NCBI GenBank assembly: GCA_013416795.1
Contig: RQSC01000602.1
Coordinates: 1 to 64,000, forward strand
Direction: 5' to 3'
DNA length: 64,000 nucleotides
Source of the DNA: Prasinococcaceae sp. CCMP 1430
Taxonomy: Eukaryota > Plantae > Prasinodermophyta
Positions 50,948 to 57,768 of the stretch are shown here, one piece after another (positions within the stretch are counted from its first letter, which is position 1; every line of letters begins with the position of its first letter). The notes below the pieces were generated by a model. The model searched no databases. It was not told the origin of the DNA and saw only the letters and a program-made list of their open reading frames with translations. A program made the position numbers and the translations under genes.

Positions 50948-51776
50948 CGTNNNNNNNNNNNNNNNNNNNNNNNNNNNNNNNNNNNNNNNNNNNNNNNNNN
51001 NNNNNNNNNNNNNNNNNNNNNNNNNNNNNNNNNNNNNNNNNNNNNNNNNNNNNNNNNNNNNNNNNNNNNNNNNNNNNNNNNNNNNNNNNNNNNNNNNNNN
51101 NNNNNNNNNNNNNNNNNNNNNNNNNNNNNNNNNNNNNNNNNNNNNNNNNNNNNNNNNNNNNNNNNNNNNNNNNNNNNNNNNNNNNNNNNNNNNNNNNNNN
51201 NNNNNNNNNNNNNNNNNNNNNNNNNNNNNNNNNNNNNNNNNNNNNNNNNNNNNNNNNNNNNNNNNNNNNGCGCGGGCGCGCGCGCGCGTGGCGCGCCCCC
51301 CAGCCCGGTCGGCGCCCTGGGTCTATCCGCTCGCGCCGCCCCCGAAACCGAAAGGCGGGAATTTGGTCGCGAGTGCGCGCCGACGCGCGCGCCGAAACGC
51401 GCTCCGTCGAACGCGGAGAACGCATGCGGATCTCCATACGCGCCCGGCGACACTCTCGCGGAAGTCCGCGGGCAAAAGCGTTTTTTTTTTGGTCCCCGCG
51501 CGCGCTCGCCCGTTTTCGCGCGCCGGCGGCTGGCCGGGCGCGCCCGCGCGGGGATGAGGTTTATCCACAACGAAGGGTCCACAAAATAACATACACGGAA
51601 TTAAAAAATCTTGGTCTTATTGGTATTAGTACATCTCCTTTATTTCGTAACGCAGTACCTAAATGTGCTCATCACGCGTTTTTGCGCGCGCTCGCCCCCG
51701 CGCGCGCGTTTGGGTCGCGGCGCGCGCGCGCGCGGGTGCGGAGAGGCGAGCGCGCGCGCGGCGAGGCGGTGCGCAG

Positions 51777-52279
51777 GACGCCGCGCCGCTCGGCGAGCTC
51801 GACCTCGCGCCGCCGCACTGGACGGCGCCCGCCAGCAGCAAGCTGCGCAAGCCCTCCGACCTGGCCGCCGCGCGCGACGAGTTCTGGGACACGGCACCCG
51901 CCTACGGGGGCGGCGAGGAGATATGGTGCGAGCGAGCGAGCGAGCGAGCGCCTCGGGTTCTAGCGTTTGTTTTCTTTGTGGCGTGCGCATGCGCAGGTGT
52001 GCCAAGCGTGTCGCATTGCTGCCGCAGAGCCCGCCAGCCACGACAACGCGAGCGCCGCTAATCGCATAGCTTCGCGCGCGGCGCTCCAACCGCAGGTTGG
52101 CGCTCAGGTCTGCGTCGGAGTTGGCGAGGGGCAACGACCTCGACATGGCGGAGGCCATCGTGGGCTCGGCTGGCATCATCGCCGGCAAGCGCGGGCTCGC
52201 TGAATGCTACGACGAGCTCGGACGAAAGTACGAGCTGCCGGAGTACGTGCTCAGTGACCCGGACAACTTGCTCGGATGA
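51777..52279 (+). CDS. DC-UbP/UBTD-type ubiquitin-binding-domain protein (intron ~51926-52095; start uncertain)
   Basis: ARDEFWDTAPAYGGGEEIW|LALRSA...ECYDELGRKYELPEYVLSDPDNL matches the UBD signature EFWDTAP..GRKEIW / YDELG..Y.LP.Y. Confidence 0.85.
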
Positions 52280-52872
52280 GCAAGAGCGCAAGCACAACGC
52301 CCTCACACCGGCGTGCTCTTGGGCGCGTGCGCCTTTGTGTCACACGGCGTGCGTGCGCGCGGCAGACAATTCACGTACGCAGCGTGCACCCATGCCCACG
52401 AGCAAGGGCGTGCACGGGCACTCGGAGGACAGCTGCTGCAGATAGCTACTAGCTGGAGAGAGGATAGCTAATACAGAGTTGCGGATGCAGCAAATAATAG
52501 GAAGAGGGCGCACGAATTCACCACAGTAGCACTGGCAGAGTAGACTCGGAGACGGCATCCTGCGACCACCCAACCCCGCCACGCGCGCGCGCGGACGCGT
52601 GTGCGCAGATACGCGCCCGTCCGTGCGCTTCAACCCCTCCCAGGCCTCGGCAGCGTGCCCCCCCCCCCCCTAGCTAGGTGCACTGGCAGGTCGTTTGATG
52701 AGCGCTTCATACAGACTGTACAGTACAGTATTGAGGTGAACCGTAACATTGGTAGGGTTTAAAGTCGTGACACGCACTCGATGCGCACGCGACGAGCGAG
52801 AGTGCGCTCGCGCGGGGCGGTGCCACAGGGGGGCACGGCGGCAGCGGTGGCGGGCGGGGCAGGCAGGGGGGG

Positions 52873-55678
52873 ATGCATGCGGGCGTCGCAGTAGCGCGAG
52901 CGCTCGCCGAGCACGCGCGCGCCTGCGCGCGTGCGCTCGCGCGCGATGCGCCGCAAGCCGCGGCCGCGGCCGCGTGCGCCCGCGGCCTCGCGGACGCCCG
53001 TGGGTGTGCTCCCCTTCCCGCGCCCCCCGCATCGGCGCTCCCGCTTGCCGGCACGCGCTGGTCCGTGCACGCGCGCGCATTCGCCGCTTCCGCAGCCACA
53101 GCTGCTCCGGGCGGCGTCGCCGCCGAGGAGGATCCGTGGGCGATCCACTATGCGGCGGCCGCGCGAGCGCGAGCGGGCGAGGACGTGCTCCTGTTGGGCA
53201 TGGGCGTGCCCGACACGCCGACCTCGCCCGCTGTGCGCGCGGCGGCGGCTGCAGCGCTCGATGCGCCAGGCGGCGAGGGCTACGCGCCTGCCATGGGCGA
53301 CGAGCGCCTGCGCGCGGCCGTCGTGGCGTCGATGGGCGCTGACGCGGCCTCGACGTCGGTGTGCGTGACGCCCGGCGCGCAGACAGCGCTCTACATGGCG
53401 CTGCACGTGGCCGTCGCGCGCGCTGGCGACTCCGCGCCGCTGGTGATGACACCCGCTCCCGCGTACGCCACATACGAGCACACCATCGCCATGGCCGGCG
53501 GCGAAATGGCCCGCGTGGAGACGGACGAGGATGCGGGCTTCGCCCTGCACGTGAGCGACCTGACCGCGGGGCTGGACGCCGCACGCGCGGCCGGGCGCTC
53601 CGTGGCGGCCGTCCTCCTGACCAATCCGCACAATCCCACCGGCAACGTACTGTCGCGAGAGTTGCTCGCGGTTGGCGCGCTGTGCGAGGCGGCTGGCGCG
53701 ATGCTCATCGTCGACGAGGTGTACGCGCCACTCGTGTTTGGGGCTTCCGGCCGTGATGGGGGAGGCTTTGCCCCCGTGGCGTCGGTCCCCGAGCTCGCGC
53801 GCCACGCGTTTGCGGTAGGGAGCCTTAGCAAGGCTGGGCTGCGGCCGGGATGGCGCGTGGGCTGGCTCGCGGCGCCTGTCGTCGCCGAGGCGGAGGTGGA
53901 GGCGCTTTCCAAAGCAGTGCTCTTCGGCACATCGCCAGCCGCGCAGGCGGCGGCGCTGACTGCGATGCCCCTCGTCGCGCCTGGCAACGCGGAGGCGCGA
54001 CGGTACGCCGCACGCGCACGCGCGCTCGCCGAGGCGCTCGCTGGCGCCGAGGCGGCGTATGACCTCGGCGAGGGCAGCGACAATGTGGGGCTGGTCCACC
54101 TTCACGCGCCACGCGGGGGGCTCTTTGCGATGGTCCGCGTGCGTGCCTGCGGCGCGGCCAGTGGCGAGGAGTTCGCCTCGCGGCTGCTGGAGGACCACGG
54201 CGTGTCTGTGCTACCGGGCGGCGCGTTCGGCGCGCCCGACTGGGTGCGCGTGGGCCTGCTCGCGGACGAGGCGGGGATGGCGCGTGCGGGCGCAGCCATT
54301 GCGGCCACAGCCAAGTCCTTCGCGTGCGAGGGGGTGGCATCAAGGAGGAGCAGCGCGGAGAGGGACGAGTCGAATGCTCGAGCCCAAGGGCGCGCAGGCG
54401 AAGCGATGGCCCAGGAGCCTGCGCGCGGCGCCGTGGTTGTTGGCGGAGCTGCTCACGCCGCGTGGGCGCGCGAGATGCATGCGCACCTCCAGCGACAGTT
54501 GCCTCGCGCGCAGATCGCGCTGTGGACTGAGGACCAGCAGGGAGAAACAAGCATGCATGGTACGTGCGTCAGGGGCAGCGCAGTGATGCCGCGCTCGATC
54601 GAGTGGAGCCGTGCTGCTCTTGCTGTACCTTTTCTGACACACGTCCCGACGCTCGTGTTCATACGAATGCGCACATCGAAAGGCGCGCTGGATGCGGTGC
54701 GTGGCGCGCAGGCGGTTTTCGCCTGGGACCCCCCACGCGGACTGTGGGATACTCCAGAGGTCGCGCAAGCGTCACAGCTGGCACTGGTGCAGGCGTTGGG
54801 AGTGGGCGTGGATTGCCTCGCACGCGGCGGGGCTCCACCTCCTCGCGCTACGATAGCGCGAGTTGTAGACGAGCATGCGGGGGCGCGATATGCGCGCTAC
54901 GTTCTCGCGGCCGCGCTCGCGCACTGCGCGGGCATGGGCCCCGACGCACGCCGCGGCAAACGCGCACCGACGATGGACCCAGCTGAGTGCGCGGTGGGTG
55001 TAATGGGCAGCGGCGCTTTCGGCACCGCTGCTGCGGAGGCGCTCGCCGACGCGGGCTTCGATGTCGCGGTGTGGTCAAGAAAGACGGCGCCGAGGTGCGC
55101 GGCCGACGTTGAGGTGATGCTCGGCCCCAGGCGCATGGGCGCATTCCTGGCGCGCACACGCGTGCTTGTGCTCGCGCTGCCCGCAGTCCCCGCCACCATT
55201 GGCCTGGTGGCCGAGCCGGAGCTACGCGCGCTACAGGCGGGCGGCTGTGTTATCAACGTCGGTAGGGGCGAGGGTGCGCATGCACGCGCGGAGTGCGCGC
55301 GCGTGCGAATGTCGTGTGCGCTTGGTTACAGCGTGTGTCTGCGAGCGGGCGAGCGGGCGCGCGCGCGCGTGGTGCCCATGCTCATGTGTTGTCCACCGCT
55401 GACATCTTCGACCCACCTCGAACGCACGATTGAAAGTGCTCTGCACCGACGGCCTTCTGGCCGCGCTCAGCTCGGGCCACCTGTCGTCAGCAACGCTCGA
55501 CGTCACATCTCCTGAGCCGCTGCCGCCGGGCCACGCGCTTCTTGCTCATCCTCGCGTGTGCGTGACGCCGCACGTCGCTGGCGTCAGCACCGCTGCCGAC
55601 ACCGCAGCAATCGTTGCTTCTGACTGGAAGCGCGTCATGGCCGGTGGCATGCCAGCGCATCCCGTCGCGCCTTGGTAG
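52873..55678 (+). CDS. Fusion of a PLP class I/II aminotransferase (AruH-like) and a GhrA-type D-2-hydroxyacid dehydrogenase; introns 54560-54682 and 55274-55436
   Basis: Aminotransferase: WAIHYAAAARARAGEDVLLLGMGVPD, LTNPHNPTGNV, IVDEVY, SLSKAGLRPGWRVGW. Dehydrogenase: GVGVD, VGVMGSGAFG, VWSR, LVLALP, INVGRGE|VL, ATLDVTSPEPLP, VTPHVAG. No stop between the domains; both introns are phase-consistent GT-AG. Confidence 0.85.
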
Positions 55679-55954: not shown

Positions 55955-57768
55955 ACTGTAATCGCACCCTTAGCTGCTGCTCTCAGTAGAAGGTGTCGAC
56001 ACCGAGGTGCGCGTCATCGCCATGTTGGGTCAGCAAGTTGTACTGCTCGATGTTTGCAGGGCTCTCGAAGTCCTCCTCATCCCACTGGGCGTTGGCTGCC
56101 TCGTCGTGTTCGTACTGCTTCGTGTCAGCATCCTGTGTCTGATCGTTCGCAACATCCGTCCCCCTAGGCCTCTGGGTCAGCAACTCTTCTTCGGCCTCTC
56201 TGCAGGTCTGGTTGAGCGTCTCATTTTTTCGGTCGTGTTCCTCCTTGAGTCTGTCGGCGTGGTCAGGATTGATGCACTTGTCGAACATGCTGTCCACTCC
56301 CTTCCTTGGCTGACCGATACCCATGTTTGATCGAACATCACGCAACACATCGATGTACCGGTAGAATAGCGACGACTGCGCGCCAAAGAGCCCGTCGCGC
56401 GAACTTCGATTCGCACTGCTGAGGTTCACGCATGGAGGCCCGGCGAGGATCAGATGTGGCAGCCCGTATTCCTTGATCAGCTCCTCCACCCCTTCTTCCT
56501 GCCACGCTCGCCCGGTGATGCTCCCTTTCGGAACGAGCTGCGTCTTCTTCCCCGAGGCGAGATGGCGCCAGCTGACGACAGCTTCAGCATTCTTGTCGAT
56601 CTCGCTGGTTACCAAGGTCTTGACTCTGATGCCAAGTTGGTCCAGCGCGACCGACGCTGCCCCGATCCCGTCGAAAAGGCTCCACACGACCAAGCCGCCC
56701 TTGGTCGACCCCTTGGGATACTTCCTCTTGACCCAGTCTTCATCAGTCATCCTTGCCAGCGGGCGAAGCACGAAGACGGCTGTTCCGACGTGCCAAGATC
56801 GCCCGAGCAGGCCTCGAGCGATCGGCTCAGACAAGCCCATCGTGGCGCCGCGGGGGAACCCCATGAGCTGCTCGAGCTTGCGTGCGTAGATGTTCCTGTA
56901 GAAGGTGGCGTTGCCGATGAAGTTGGCATCAGCACTCTCAGGTATCAAGAGATACTGGCGCACAGTGCTCGAAGCCTGGCGCTTGACAACGCCCTCCTTC
57001 GTTTTCACGTCGAAATGGAGAGACTTCAACGTCTCCCCTGCCGCGAGATGAAGATTGATCCTTGTTAGTTTCTTGTTCTCGAGCCCTCTGCTGCAGGGAC
57101 AGCACAGCGCTGGCGTGCGTTGTGGTTTGGATGCGCGTGCGGTAAGAGTCCAGTCAGCGCGCAGAGCAGTCAGCGTTCGCTCGAGGTGCACCGCCAGCGC
57201 TCTGCCACAACGTACGCAGTTTGAAGTCTTCTGGCAACGAGGAAACGTTGGACAGAATGTCGATGATTTCCTTGTGCTTCTGAGCACCAAAGTCTCGATT
57301 GCGCCCCCACGCTTCTCCTGTGACCTTCTTGATCGAAGTGTGGCCGCGAAGGTTCGTTGCGAACCAACGCTTCCTCATCAACAGCCCGCCATGGTGGACT
57401 GCGTCGAGTATCTCCCCCTTTTCGCCCACTGCGCGCCGCATCAGGTCCAGATCGTCCTGCTGCTCCTTCTTGGTGCCCGGGTACACGTTTTCCACGACAG
57501 TGACTGGTCCCTCCGGGTTCGCCGTTGGCGACTCACCGAACGCCCGCTGGGCGTCCATCAAGCGCTTGAAGGCGTTTGGCTTGCCATCTGGGAGCACCTC
57601 CTCAGTGGCCATGCGCTTGCCCCGGGTGTCTGCCAAGGACGTCGTGCCAAAGAGTGCCTGCACTGCGCGGTCCTCGTCATCGTTGTGCTGTACGTACGCA
57701 TGGCCATCGAGGCAATCTGTCAGCGCGGGCCCAGCGGATGGCAGTAGTAACAAGGGTGCGATTACAGT
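55955..57768. repeat. Perfect 17-bp inverted repeat pair (55955-55971 / 57752-57768) bracketing the DRM-like gene
   Basis: actgtaatcgcaccctt ... aagggtgcgattacagt; no target-site duplication evident. Confidence 0.8.
55983..57750 (-). CDS. DRM-type (domains rearranged) C5-cytosine DNA methyltransferase, no UBA domains visible; probable intron 57110-57215
   Basis: Motif order VI (GPVTVVENV), VIII (MRKRWFATNL), IX-X (LEQLMGFPRGAT..LLGRSWHV), then I (VWSLFDGIGAASVALDQLGI), II (SEID), IV (LILAGPPCVNLSSANRSSRDGLFGAQSSLFYRY). This parallels plant DRM2 (GGSPCNNLAGGNRVSRVGLEGDQSSLFFEY). Confidence 0.85.

What the first reader, a model, noticed from the sequence alone, without database searches (positions are those of the whole stretch)
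52873..55678. Aminotransferase + NADPH-type D-2-hydroxyacid dehydrogenase fusion: candidate for the first two steps of algal DMSP synthesis
Seen: one reading frame joins a complete PLP class I/II aminotransferase to a GhrA-like D-2-hydroxyacid dehydrogenase via a ~40-aa linker, with no stop and phase-consistent introns. The Rossmann beta-B strand ends in WSR, as in NADPH-preferring GhrA enzymes. The N-terminus (RWSVHARAFAAS) looks like an organellar presequence. Known: the green-algal transamination route to DMSP runs L-Met to MTOB (aminotransferase) to D-MTHB (NADPH-linked, D-specific reductase), and the eukaryotic genes for these steps are poorly identified. The N-terminal WAIHY..EDVLLLG motif resembles Pseudomonas AruH, a broad-specificity transaminase. 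Inference: this is a channelled amino acid to 2-oxo acid to D-2-hydroxy acid enzyme, possibly Met to D-MTHB; aromatic or Arg substrates are the alternatives.
Basis: partly seen in the sequence, partly recalled or inferred. Interest (0 to 1): 0.82.

Follow-up and report, generated by a model that had tools for sequence, protein, structure and literature searches.

The report
Aminotransferase fused to GhrA-type reductase
A marine green alga, Prasinoderma coloniale, has a real but rare gene that joins an amino-acid transaminase to an NADPH-type D-2-hydroxyacid reductase in one protein; the enzyme has not been studied, and the proposed role in making the sulfur compound DMSP has no support so far.

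Summary
Window 52873-55678 (+) is Prasinoderma coloniale gene PRCOL_00007024. It encodes a complete class I/II PLP aminotransferase, a roughly 40-residue connector and a complete GhrA-clade D-2-hydroxyacid dehydrogenase. There are two GT-AG introns (54560-54682 and 55274-55436).

All catalytic residues of both domains are present. The GHRA-specific tryptophan and a WSR NADPH-type loop are also present.

The same fusion occurs as an uninterrupted ORF in three other uncultured eukaryotic lineages. It is rare: four 50%-identity clusters among 1.84 billion representative proteins. Both domain trees are compatible with a single origin from bacterial-type genes.

The most likely function is transamination of an L-amino acid followed by NADPH reduction of the 2-oxo acid to the D-2-hydroxy acid. 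The substrate cannot be read from the sequence.

The DMSP reading is speculative. Published screens list P. coloniale among transcriptomes without DSYB, DSYE or TpMMT, and its DMSP production is untested. No fusion protein I found comes from a named organism, DMSP producer or not. Rival substrates are at least as plausible: glyoxylate/hydroxypyruvate, or arginine via 2-ketoarginine, which E. coli GhrA reduces.

Another first-stage reading of this scan (s1-409037) covers the same stretch.

The parts
52781..52862 (+). First coding exon in the public annotation (MRTRRARVRSRG..., Arg-rich and free of acidic residues).
   Evidence: This is the only exon split that reproduces P0002 and has an AG acceptor. 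The protein is P0002 from EukProt.
52863..53095 (+). Ambiguous 5' stretch. The public model treats it as a GC-AG intron (233 nt).
   Evidence: the codon-position GC pattern does not decide between the two. Related environmental variants open the ORF at different points.
53096..54310 (+). Class I/II (fold type I) PLP aminotransferase domain. It runs from just before the DPWAIHY motif to the end of the C-terminal small domain.
   Evidence: Pfam PF00155, 163 bits. PDB AspAT/ArAT hits at E 6e-24. AF2 pLDDT 91.8, with Foldseek TM 0.80-0.85 to subgroup I-beta aminotransferases.
53830..53832 (+). AAG codon for the Schiff-base lysine of the SLSK motif (K273 of P0002).
   Evidence: Read from the sequence. 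It aligns with the catalytic Lys of 1j32/6f77 and is invariant in 44 homologues.
54311..54425 (+). Inter-domain connector (KSFACEGVASRRSSAERDESNARAQGRAGEAMAQEPAR), about 38 codons with no stop. It varies in sequence and length among the four fusion lineages.
   Evidence: AF2 extends the last aminotransferase helix through most of it. The first ~18 residues of the dehydrogenase model have low confidence.
54426..54559 (+). Start of the GhrA-like dehydrogenase (substrate-binding domain, beta1-alpha1-beta2), up to the exon end.
   Evidence: BLASTP against E. coli GhrA starts at GhrA residue 19. In P0005 the dehydrogenase aligns from GhrA residue 8 to its last residue.
54560..54682 (+). Intron 1: 123 nt, GTACGT...AAAG, phase 1, a multiple of three with no stop, so the ORF reads through it.
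   Evidence: absent from P0002. GC is 0.59 against 0.71-0.74 in the exons. Orthologues have no counterpart of the 41 residues.
54683..55273 (+). Exon 2: the rest of the substrate-binding domain and most of the NAD(P)-binding domain. It includes the GHRA Trp (54724-54726), LGVGVD, GSGAFG, WSR (55072-55080) and the catalytic Arg (55264-55266).
55274..55436 (+). Intron 2: 163 nt, GTGCGC...AAAG, phase 1. It shifts the reading frame.
55437..55678 (+). Exon 3: the end of the dehydrogenase, with the catalytic Glu (EPLP) and His (CAC at 55571-55573), and stop TAG at 55676-55678.
   Evidence: aligned with GhrA ...[23 protein letters not shown].

Best explanation
This is a nuclear gene of Prasinoderma coloniale for a bifunctional enzyme. 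An N-terminal fold-type-I PLP aminotransferase is joined through a mostly helical connector to a full-length GhrA-clade D-isomer-specific 2-hydroxyacid dehydrogenase.

**Shown**
- Both domains are complete and keep their catalytic residues.
- The arrangement is conserved in frame in four eukaryotic lineages.

**Inferred mechanism**
- The aminotransferase moves the amino group of an L-amino acid to a 2-oxo-acid acceptor. The acceptor is probably not bound in the dicarboxylate mode, because the Lys109-equivalent residue is Gln.
- The dehydrogenase then reduces the new 2-oxo acid with NADPH to the D-2-hydroxy acid.
- Reduction is strongly favoured, so it would pull the freely reversible transamination forward and keep a reactive 2-oxo acid at low concentration.
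- Both parent families are obligate homodimers, so the fusion should form at least a dimer.
- An Arg-rich N-terminal extension suggests an organellar location.

**Substrate**
The substrate is not determined. My ranking is:
1. A small 2-oxo acid of the glyoxylate/hydroxypyruvate type (from Gly/Ser/Ala metabolism).
2. Arginine via 2-ketoarginine.
3. Hydrophobic or aromatic amino acids.
4. Methionine.
For: **Gene model and identity**
- Gene model and its match to the public annotation.

**Aminotransferase domain**
- PF00155 at 163 bits.
- SLSK lysine, NPxNPTG Asn, DEVY and the GWRVGW and VRVG arginines align with solved AspATs and are invariant or nearly so in 44 homologues.
- The model is confident (pLDDT 91.8) and matches I-beta aminotransferases.

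**Dehydrogenase domain**
- The best NCBIfam model is GhrA (124 bits; 188 bits for the P0005 domain).
- It is 30% identical over 293 residues to E. coli GhrA, E 5e-38.
- It groups with all GhrA-named proteins at SH-aLRT 99.
- The GHRA-unique Trp, the GxGxD motif and the Arg/Glu/His triad are conserved in all four fusions.
- The top 20 Foldseek hits are all GHRA-clade structures, TM up to 0.88.

**Cofactor**
- The loop has WSR and no Asp.
- The GHRA NADPH fingerprint is described in PMC6303947.
- E. coli GhrA strongly prefers NADPH.

**Fusion conserved elsewhere**
- Tara Oceans eukaryote scaffolds: a 634-640-codon ORF runs through the junction, with introns elsewhere in the gene.
- P0004 (740 aa) and P0005 (733 aa) carry the same architecture.
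Against: - There is no transcript or protein evidence in hand. All environmental copies are genomic ORFs, and the public model comes from a mixed RNA-seq, ab initio and homology pipeline.
- Fusion of two enzymes does not prove that they act consecutively.
- The dehydrogenase could work in the oxidative direction.
- The NADPH fingerprint [ST]R[ST]x[RK] is only partly matched in P. coloniale (S-R-K-T-A).
- The near-invariant Trp of the 'PLW.HP' motif is Leu in the P. coloniale and Tara pair. The consequence is unknown.
- Closely related aminotransferases also exist unfused in eukaryote-like contigs.
Confidence: 0.7

Rival explanations
1. DMSP reading. The fusion performs the first two steps of the algal transamination route: L-Met -> MTOB, then NADPH-dependent reduction to D-MTHB.
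For: - The pathway needs an aminotransferase and an NADPH-linked reductase whose genes are unknown in algae (PMC5395565; PMC11306096).
- The dehydrogenase family is D-specific and the loop is NADPH-type.
- GHRA pockets are described as large and hydrophobic.
- Some high-DMSP prasinophytes (Pycnococcus) also lack all known MTHB methyltransferases. Absence of those genes in P. coloniale is therefore not decisive.
Against: - P. coloniale, P. singularis and Prasinococcus are listed as lacking DSYE, DSYB and TpMMT, and DMSP production in the genus is untested.
- Only four fusion clusters exist among 1.84 billion representatives, and none carries an organism name.
- The aminotransferase shows no special affinity to Met transaminases: YbdL 28% identity, and the NCBIfam Met-aminotransferase model scores below several others.
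- E. coli GhrA did not reduce 2-ketobutyrate, 3-mercaptopyruvate or phenylpyruvate.
- The committed, DMSP-specific step is the third one, not these two.
Confidence: 0.07
2. Arginine route. The aminotransferase is an AruH-like arginine transaminase making 2-ketoarginine. The GhrA domain reduces this to D-2-hydroxy-5-guanidinovalerate (argininic acid). The route would release amino nitrogen or make a guanidino hydroxy acid.
For: - The nearest named bacterial relatives of the aminotransferase are labelled arginine:pyruvate transaminase by IMG.
- The best NCBIfam models for the aminotransferase include the arginine-derivative enzymes GntC and VioD.
- E. coli GhrA reduces 2-ketoarginine with kcat/KM only 24-fold below glyoxylate. 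The GHRA Trp (W45) contributes to that activity.
- That Trp is conserved in all four fusions.
- The residue after the Trp is Asp/Gln/Asp in three of the four fusions.
Against: - The IMG names are automatic assignments on proteins only about 36% identical to this domain.
- Solved Arg-derivative enzymes (GntC 8fft, 4m2j) are much more distant than AspATs (E about 4e-10 against 6e-24).
- The GntC model score is far below its cut-off (154 against 415).
- 2-Ketoarginine is a promiscuous substrate of E. coli GhrA, not a known physiological one.
- Similarity to P. aeruginosa AruH itself could not be tested.
Confidence: 0.2
3. Glyoxylate/hydroxypyruvate route. The dehydrogenase does what characterised GhrA enzymes do best, reducing glyoxylate to glycolate or hydroxypyruvate to D-glycerate. 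The aminotransferase supplies that 2-oxo acid from Gly or Ser, or uses glyoxylate as the amino acceptor. This would be an organellar photorespiration-like or serine-catabolic module.
For: - Glyoxylate is the best substrate and hydroxypyruvate a secondary one in all three characterised GHRA enzymes (PMC6303947).
- The dehydrogenase is sister to the GhrA-named clade and structurally closest to it.
- The candidate N-terminal extensions here and in the Tara orthologue are Arg-rich, which would fit organellar targeting.
Against: - Canonical Ser:glyoxylate and Ala:glyoxylate aminotransferases are class V, not this class.
- The aminotransferase is no closer to class I glyoxylate-using enzymes (2zc0 at 38 bits, AlaAT 3tcm at 71 bits) than to AspATs (88 bits).
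- The dehydrogenase is far below the GhrA equivalog cut-off (124 against 403), so identity of substrate is not implied.
Confidence: 0.25
4. The fusion is an annotation or reading artefact. Two adjacent genes happen to lie in the same frame in very GC-rich DNA, where stop codons are rare.
For: - At about 70% GC, long spurious ORFs are common on both strands of this region.
- No transcript was seen directly.
- A Met codon lies in the connector.
Against: - The same in-frame junction, with different connector sequences, occurs in three other lineages. One has only 52% GC (733-codon ORF), and one has introns elsewhere in the gene but none at the junction.
- The aminotransferase has no stop and the dehydrogenase has no independent upstream region.
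- The RNA-seq-aided public annotation calls one gene.
Confidence: 0.04

Closest known systems
GhrA (YcdW), the glyoxylate/hydroxypyruvate reductase A subfamily (GHRA) of D-2-hydroxyacid dehydrogenases
   Same: - Full-length homology: 30% identity to E. coli GhrA, and 36% for the P0005 orthologue.
- Arg/Glu/His triad, GxGxD motif, the subfamily-specific Trp and a WSR NADPH-type loop.
- The closest solved folds are GHRA structures.
   Different: - It is fused behind an aminotransferase and is eukaryotic, whereas GHRA is described as almost entirely bacterial.
- It scores far below the NCBIfam equivalog cut-off (124 against 403).
- The NADPH fingerprint is only partly matched.
- The Trp of 'PLW' is Leu in the P. 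coloniale and Tara pair.
- Its substrate is unknown.
AruH-type arginine:pyruvate transaminase and related subgroup I-beta aminotransferases
   Same: - Same fold and catalytic residues.
- The nearest named relatives carry the AruH label.
- Gln replaces the Lys that binds dicarboxylate substrates in I-beta AspATs. The alignment is; the role of that Lys is from my own knowledge of Thermus AspAT.
   Different: - Only about 36% identical to the labelled proteins.
- It forms a separate, eukaryote-context clade with the other fusions.
- It was not compared with P. aeruginosa PA4976 itself.
Tyrosine aminotransferase plus hydroxyphenylpyruvate reductase (rosmarinic-acid route), and SerA plus SerC (phosphoserine route)
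   Same: A class I or V aminotransferase and a 2HADH-family enzyme act on the two sides of the same 2-oxo acid in consecutive steps. This is established pathway knowledge. The HPPR structure 3baz appears among the fold matches.
   Different: - In the pathways as I know them, those enzymes are separate proteins.
- HPPR belongs to GHRB and SerA to the SERA subfamily, not GHRA.
DsyGD, the bifunctional DMSP enzyme of Gynuella (Wang et al. 2024)
   Same: It is a fusion of two consecutive pathway enzymes in the DMSP transamination route, which shows that fusions occur in that pathway.
   Different: DsyGD is a methyltransferase plus decarboxylase (steps 3 and 4). It shares no homology with this protein, and P. 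coloniale is listed as lacking the related DSYE.

Membership tests
Class I/II PLP aminotransferase (Pfam PF00155, fold type I) | Profile match above the curated threshold over the whole domain | tested here: met
   163.1 bits against a cut-off of 19.7, profile positions 2-357 of 361.
Class I/II PLP aminotransferase (Pfam PF00155, fold type I) | Schiff-base Lys; the PLP-binding Asn, Asp and Tyr; the phosphate-binding Arg; and the alpha-carboxylate Arg | tested here: met
   SLSK (K at 53830-53832), NPHNPTG, DEVY, GWRVGW and VRVG align with 1j32/6f77. They are invariant or at least 90% conserved in A4 and invariant in A1.
Class I/II PLP aminotransferase (Pfam PF00155, fold type I) | Aminotransferase fold | tested here: met
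   AF2 pLDDT 91.8. Foldseek TM 0.80-0.85 (target-normalised) to AspAT, ArAT and prephenate aminotransferase.
GHRA subfamily of D-2-hydroxyacid dehydrogenases | 2HADH catalytic Arg-Glu-His triad and the GxGxD substrate-carboxylate loop | tested here: met
   R (55264-55266), E of EPLP and H (55571-55573) align with E. coli GhrA R227 and H275. LGVGVD aligns with LGAGVD.
GHRA subfamily of D-2-hydroxyacid dehydrogenases | Subfamily-unique Trp in the beta3-alpha3 loop (Trp53 of S. meliloti/R. etli GhrA, W45 of E. coli GhrA) | tested here: met
   FAWDPP (W at 54724-54726) aligns with LVWHPP. It is conserved in all four fusions. The feature is defined in PMC6303947.
GHRA subfamily of D-2-hydroxyacid dehydrogenases | NADPH fingerprint [ST]R[ST]x[RK] in the betaB-alphaD loop, with no Asp | tested here: inconclusive
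   P. coloniale has S-R-K-T-A (two of four specified positions), Tara S-R-S-R-P, P0004 S-R-S-G-G and P0005 S-R-S-R-R (full match). None has an Asp.
GHRA subfamily of D-2-hydroxyacid dehydrogenases | Placement with characterised or named GhrA in a tree, and closest fold | tested here: met
   The four fusion domains plus 22 proteins that include all the GhrA-named ones form a clade with SH-aLRT 99. The top 20 Foldseek hits are GHRA structures.
GHRA subfamily of D-2-hydroxyacid dehydrogenases | NCBIfam GhrA equivalog score (same function as E. coli GhrA) | tested here: not met
   123.9 bits against a cut-off of 403. It is related to GhrA but is not an equivalog.
AruH arginine:pyruvate transaminase | Close similarity to P. 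aeruginosa AruH, and Arg/pyruvate activity | not tested
   The link is only indirect: homologues about 36% identical carry the IMG name.
Enzymes of the DMSP transamination pathway (Met aminotransferase / MTOB reductase) | Co-occurrence with an MTHB S-methyltransferase (DSYB, DSYE, TpMMT or DsyG) in the same organism | tested here: not met
   This is a literature check, not a search of my own. P. coloniale CCMP1413 is in Suppl. Table 3c, 'no DSYE, DSYB and TpMMT', of PMC11306096.
Enzymes of the DMSP transamination pathway (Met aminotransferase / MTOB reductase) | The organism makes DMSP, and the enzyme acts on Met/MTOB to give D-MTHB | not testable with these tools
   DMSP status of the genus is 'undetermined'. 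No sequence-defined Met aminotransferase or MTOB reductase family exists for comparison: the one bacterial candidate reductase was inactive.

The most novel reading that the evidence does not exclude
The fusion is a lineage-specific solution for the two still-unassigned first steps of the algal DMSP transamination pathway: Met -> MTOB -> D-MTHB, NADPH-linked and D-specific. In this reading Prasinoderma, like Pycnococcus, would use an undiscovered MTHB methyltransferase.
Probability: 0.07. Interest if true: 0.85.

Novelty: new variant of a known kind. Interest (0 to 1): 0.4.

Why it matters
Natural fusions often mark enzymes that act in sequence. This one therefore names a concrete, testable two-step reaction: L-amino acid to D-2-hydroxy acid. 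The physiological role of the GhrA subfamily is still described as unknown, and the subfamily was thought to be almost purely bacterial.

Identifying the substrate would assign a function to GHRA-type reductases in marine picoalgae. It could also reveal an unrecognised metabolite, such as a guanidino, sulfur or small hydroxy acid, in an early-branching green lineage.

If the substrate were methionine, the fusion would supply the missing early DMSP genes. Present evidence makes that unlikely.

Tried and rejected
**Bacterial gene neighbourhoods**
- I looked at the closest stand-alone aminotransferase (P0174) and dehydrogenase (P0221) for a conserved aminotransferase-dehydrogenase operon or a pathway hint. 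No linkage was found.
- The aminotransferase lies beside a methyltransferase and xanthine-dehydrogenase-type genes. The dehydrogenase lies beside acyl-CoA carboxylase and dehydrogenase genes.

**Synteny**
- I compared the Tara orthologue scaffold with the window. Only the fusion gene matches.

**Source organisms of P0004, P0005 and the Tara contigs**
- Cluster look-ups of neighbouring genes gave no names.
- L003 (76% GC, WD40 gene 43 nt upstream) and L004 (52% GC, adapter remnant at its 5' end) look eukaryotic but remain unassigned.

**Transcript evidence**
- I checked environmental P. coloniale-like proteins for spliced, transcript-derived copies. All eight are unspliced genomic ORFs.

**Alignment and literature**
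- A merged alignment of fusions with single-domain homologues misaligned the dehydrogenases. I discarded it and modelled the domains separately.
- Codon-position GC did not settle which N-terminus is real.
- Summers et al. 1998 could not be fetched. The pathway description is taken from PMC5395565 and PMC11306096.
- Literature searches found no paper on a natural aminotransferase-2HADH fusion or on DMSP in Prasinoderma.

**Readings rejected**
- I rejected the idea that the aminotransferase is a GntC/VioD-type cyclase. Those models top the NCBIfam list only at 154 and 101 bits against cut-offs of 415 and 391, and the solved GntC is a distant hit.
Full report
**What is in the sequence**

The window is GC-rich eukaryotic DNA. 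A 96-100% match to EukProt protein PRCOL_00007024-RA identifies it as Prasinoderma coloniale. On the + strand, one ORF runs 52873-55515 and a second, in another frame, runs 55430-55678.

Pfam finds a complete Aminotran_1_2 domain (E 1.4e-47). It also finds a 2-Hacid_dh_C domain whose profile positions 28-130 lie in the first ORF and 134-178 in the second. That is the signature of an intron.

Removing 54560-54682 (123 nt, GT..AG, in frame and stop-free) and 55274-55436 (163 nt, GT..AG) gives a 2520-nt CDS. Its last 766 residues are identical to the public protein. Both introns have lower GC (0.59 and 0.66) than the exons (0.68-0.74).

**The N-terminus is unresolved**

The public model starts at ATG 52781 and splices 52863-53095 out as a GC-AG intron. 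This is the only split that reproduces the protein and has an AG acceptor.

Near-identical environmental copies open the upstream ORF at different points, and codon-position GC does not discriminate. Either way, an Arg/Ala-rich extension precedes the conserved DPWAIHY.

The Tara orthologue has a comparable 33-residue Arg-rich leader. P0005 has a short one and P0004 has none. Organellar targeting is plausible but not shown.

**The aminotransferase half**

- The catalytic inventory is intact: SLSK lysine (53830-53832), NPHNPTG, DEVY, and the GWRVGW and VRVG arginines. It aligns with solved AspATs and is invariant or nearly so among 44 homologues.
- The AF2 model is confident (pLDDT 91.8). It matches subgroup I-beta enzymes: Pyrococcus aromatic aminotransferase, Thermus and Phormidium AspAT, and prephenate aminotransferase, with TM about 0.8.
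- No NCBIfam equivalog is reached. The best model is GntC at 154 bits against a cut-off of 415.
- Identity to the E. coli Met transaminase YbdL is 28%.
- The closest named bacterial relatives, about 36% identical, are labelled arginine:pyruvate transaminase by IMG.
- The residue aligned with the dicarboxylate-binding Lys of I-beta AspATs is Gln throughout this clade. The role of that Lys is from my own knowledge. This hints that Glu/2-oxoglutarate is not bound in the AspAT manner.

**The dehydrogenase half**

This is a full-length GhrA relative.
- It is 30% identical over 293 residues to E. coli GhrA, E 5e-38. The P0005 domain aligns from GhrA residue 8 to the last residue at 36%.
- GhrA is the best NCBIfam model, but the score is far below the equivalog cut-off (124 against 403).
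- In a tree, the four fusion domains form one group (SH-aLRT 81). That group is sister to the clade holding every GhrA-named protein, and the two together have support 99.
- The features that Matelska et al. 2018 give for GHRA were checked. The subfamily-unique Trp is present (FAWDPP, 54724-54726). The Arg/Glu/His triad and GxGxD are present. The NADPH fingerprint [ST]R[ST]x[RK] is only partly matched in P. coloniale (SRKTA), is fully matched in P0005 (SRSRR), and never includes an Asp.
- The AF2 model has pLDDT 91.6. Its 20 best structural matches are all GHRA-clade structures.

**The fusion is real, conserved and rare**

An exhaustive HMMER scan of 1.84 billion representatives returned three other two-domain proteins among the best 150 hits.
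- P0003/P0153 come from Tara Oceans eukaryotic scaffolds at 68% GC, with adaptin, DAP3 and Amt genes nearby.
- P0004 is 740 aa, from a 76% GC contig.
- P0005 is 733 aa, from a 52% GC contig.

Pfam confirms both domains in P0004 and P0005. Precomputed Pfam hits show both in P0003.

In the Tara species the gene has introns inside the aminotransferase part, but a single 634-codon exon spans the rest of the aminotransferase, the connector and the dehydrogenase. The connectors differ in sequence and length, while both flanking domains keep every catalytic residue.

The aminotransferase domains of the four fusions fall in one small clade with two unfused relatives (SH-aLRT 85). One of these, P0169, lies beside eukaryote-type genes. 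A single origin of the fusion, from bacterial-type genes, is compatible with both trees but is not proven.

**How it most likely works**

The shown facts are two intact catalytic domains on one conserved polypeptide. The rest is inference.
- The aminotransferase produces a 2-oxo acid, and the GhrA-type domain reduces it with NADPH to the D-2-hydroxy acid. This pulls a reversible transamination forward.
- Characterised GHRA enzymes act as NADPH-dependent reductases. Their best substrate is glyoxylate, with hydroxypyruvate and others as secondary substrates.
- E. coli GhrA also reduces oxaloacetate and, unexpectedly, 2-ketoarginine. For 2-ketoarginine kcat/KM is only 24-fold below glyoxylate, and W45 contributes to that activity.
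- E. coli GhrA does not reduce phenylpyruvate, 3-mercaptopyruvate or 2-ketobutyrate.
- With the AruH-type labelling of the aminotransferase's relatives, this makes Arg -> 2-ketoarginine -> argininic acid a concrete rival to a glyoxylate/hydroxypyruvate role.

**The DMSP hypothesis**

[quoted passage not shown] The first two genes are unassigned.

Nothing links this gene to that route.
- Wang et al. 2024 list P. coloniale CCMP1413, P. singularis and Prasinococcus among transcriptomes with no DSYE, DSYB or TpMMT. DMSP production in the genus is untested.
- No fusion protein I found comes from a named organism, so none can be tied to a known DMSP producer.
- Neither domain shows Met or MTOB-specific similarity.

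The hypothesis is not excluded. Pycnococcus, a high producer, also lacks the known methyltransferases. I put the DMSP reading at about 7%.

**Novelty**

I found no paper describing a natural aminotransferase-2HADH fusion or this gene. GHRA is described as almost exclusively bacterial and of unknown physiological role.

The gene is already annotated in the public genome, as a model without any functional study that I could find. I class it as a new variant (domain architecture) of known enzyme kinds, of moderate interest.

Noticed in passing
window 51663-52279 (+): The upstream neighbour is a two-exon gene for a UBTD-type ubiquitin-binding domain protein (Pfam UBD, E 2.1e-15 for the second ORF). 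It is unrelated to the fusion.
   Followed up: partly
window 55983-57290 (-): The convergent downstream ORF carries a C-5 cytosine DNA methylase domain (PF00145, E 3.4e-08). Other readers of this scan have already noted it.
   Followed up: partly
L013 4390-6747 (E. coli K-12 632389-634746): In E. coli the Met transaminase gene ybdL lies divergently next to hcxA, which is annotated 'hydroxycarboxylate dehydrogenase A'. This is a bacterial aminotransferase/hydroxy-acid dehydrogenase neighbour pair from a different dehydrogenase family. It may be worth comparing with the fusion.
   Followed up: no
window 55530-55538; alignment A3: The near-invariant Trp of the 'PLW.HP' motif, just before the catalytic His, is Leu in the P. 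coloniale and Tara fusion proteins (ALLAHPR and PLLAHPK). It is kept as Trp in P0004, P0005 and nearly all stand-alone homologues. The consequence for the pocket or the dimer interface is unknown.
   Followed up: no
L008 1243-6686: One bacterial AruH-labelled relative of the aminotransferase sits directly after a SAM methyltransferase and a three-subunit molybdenum hydroxylase (CoxS/M/L-like) set. This may be a catabolic cluster.
   Followed up: no
L003 1033-1080: On the 76% GC contig that carries P0004, a WD40 ORF ends 43 nt before the fusion's ATG. The spacer is AT-rich and resembles an intron (GTGAGG...TATAG) but is out of phase. The origin of the contig (compact eukaryote or other) is unresolved.
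   Followed up: partly
L005 6119-7696: In the Tara orthologue, an Amt-family ammonium transporter gene lies 1.4 kb downstream of the fusion on the same strand. The P. coloniale window has no such neighbour.
   Followed up: partly
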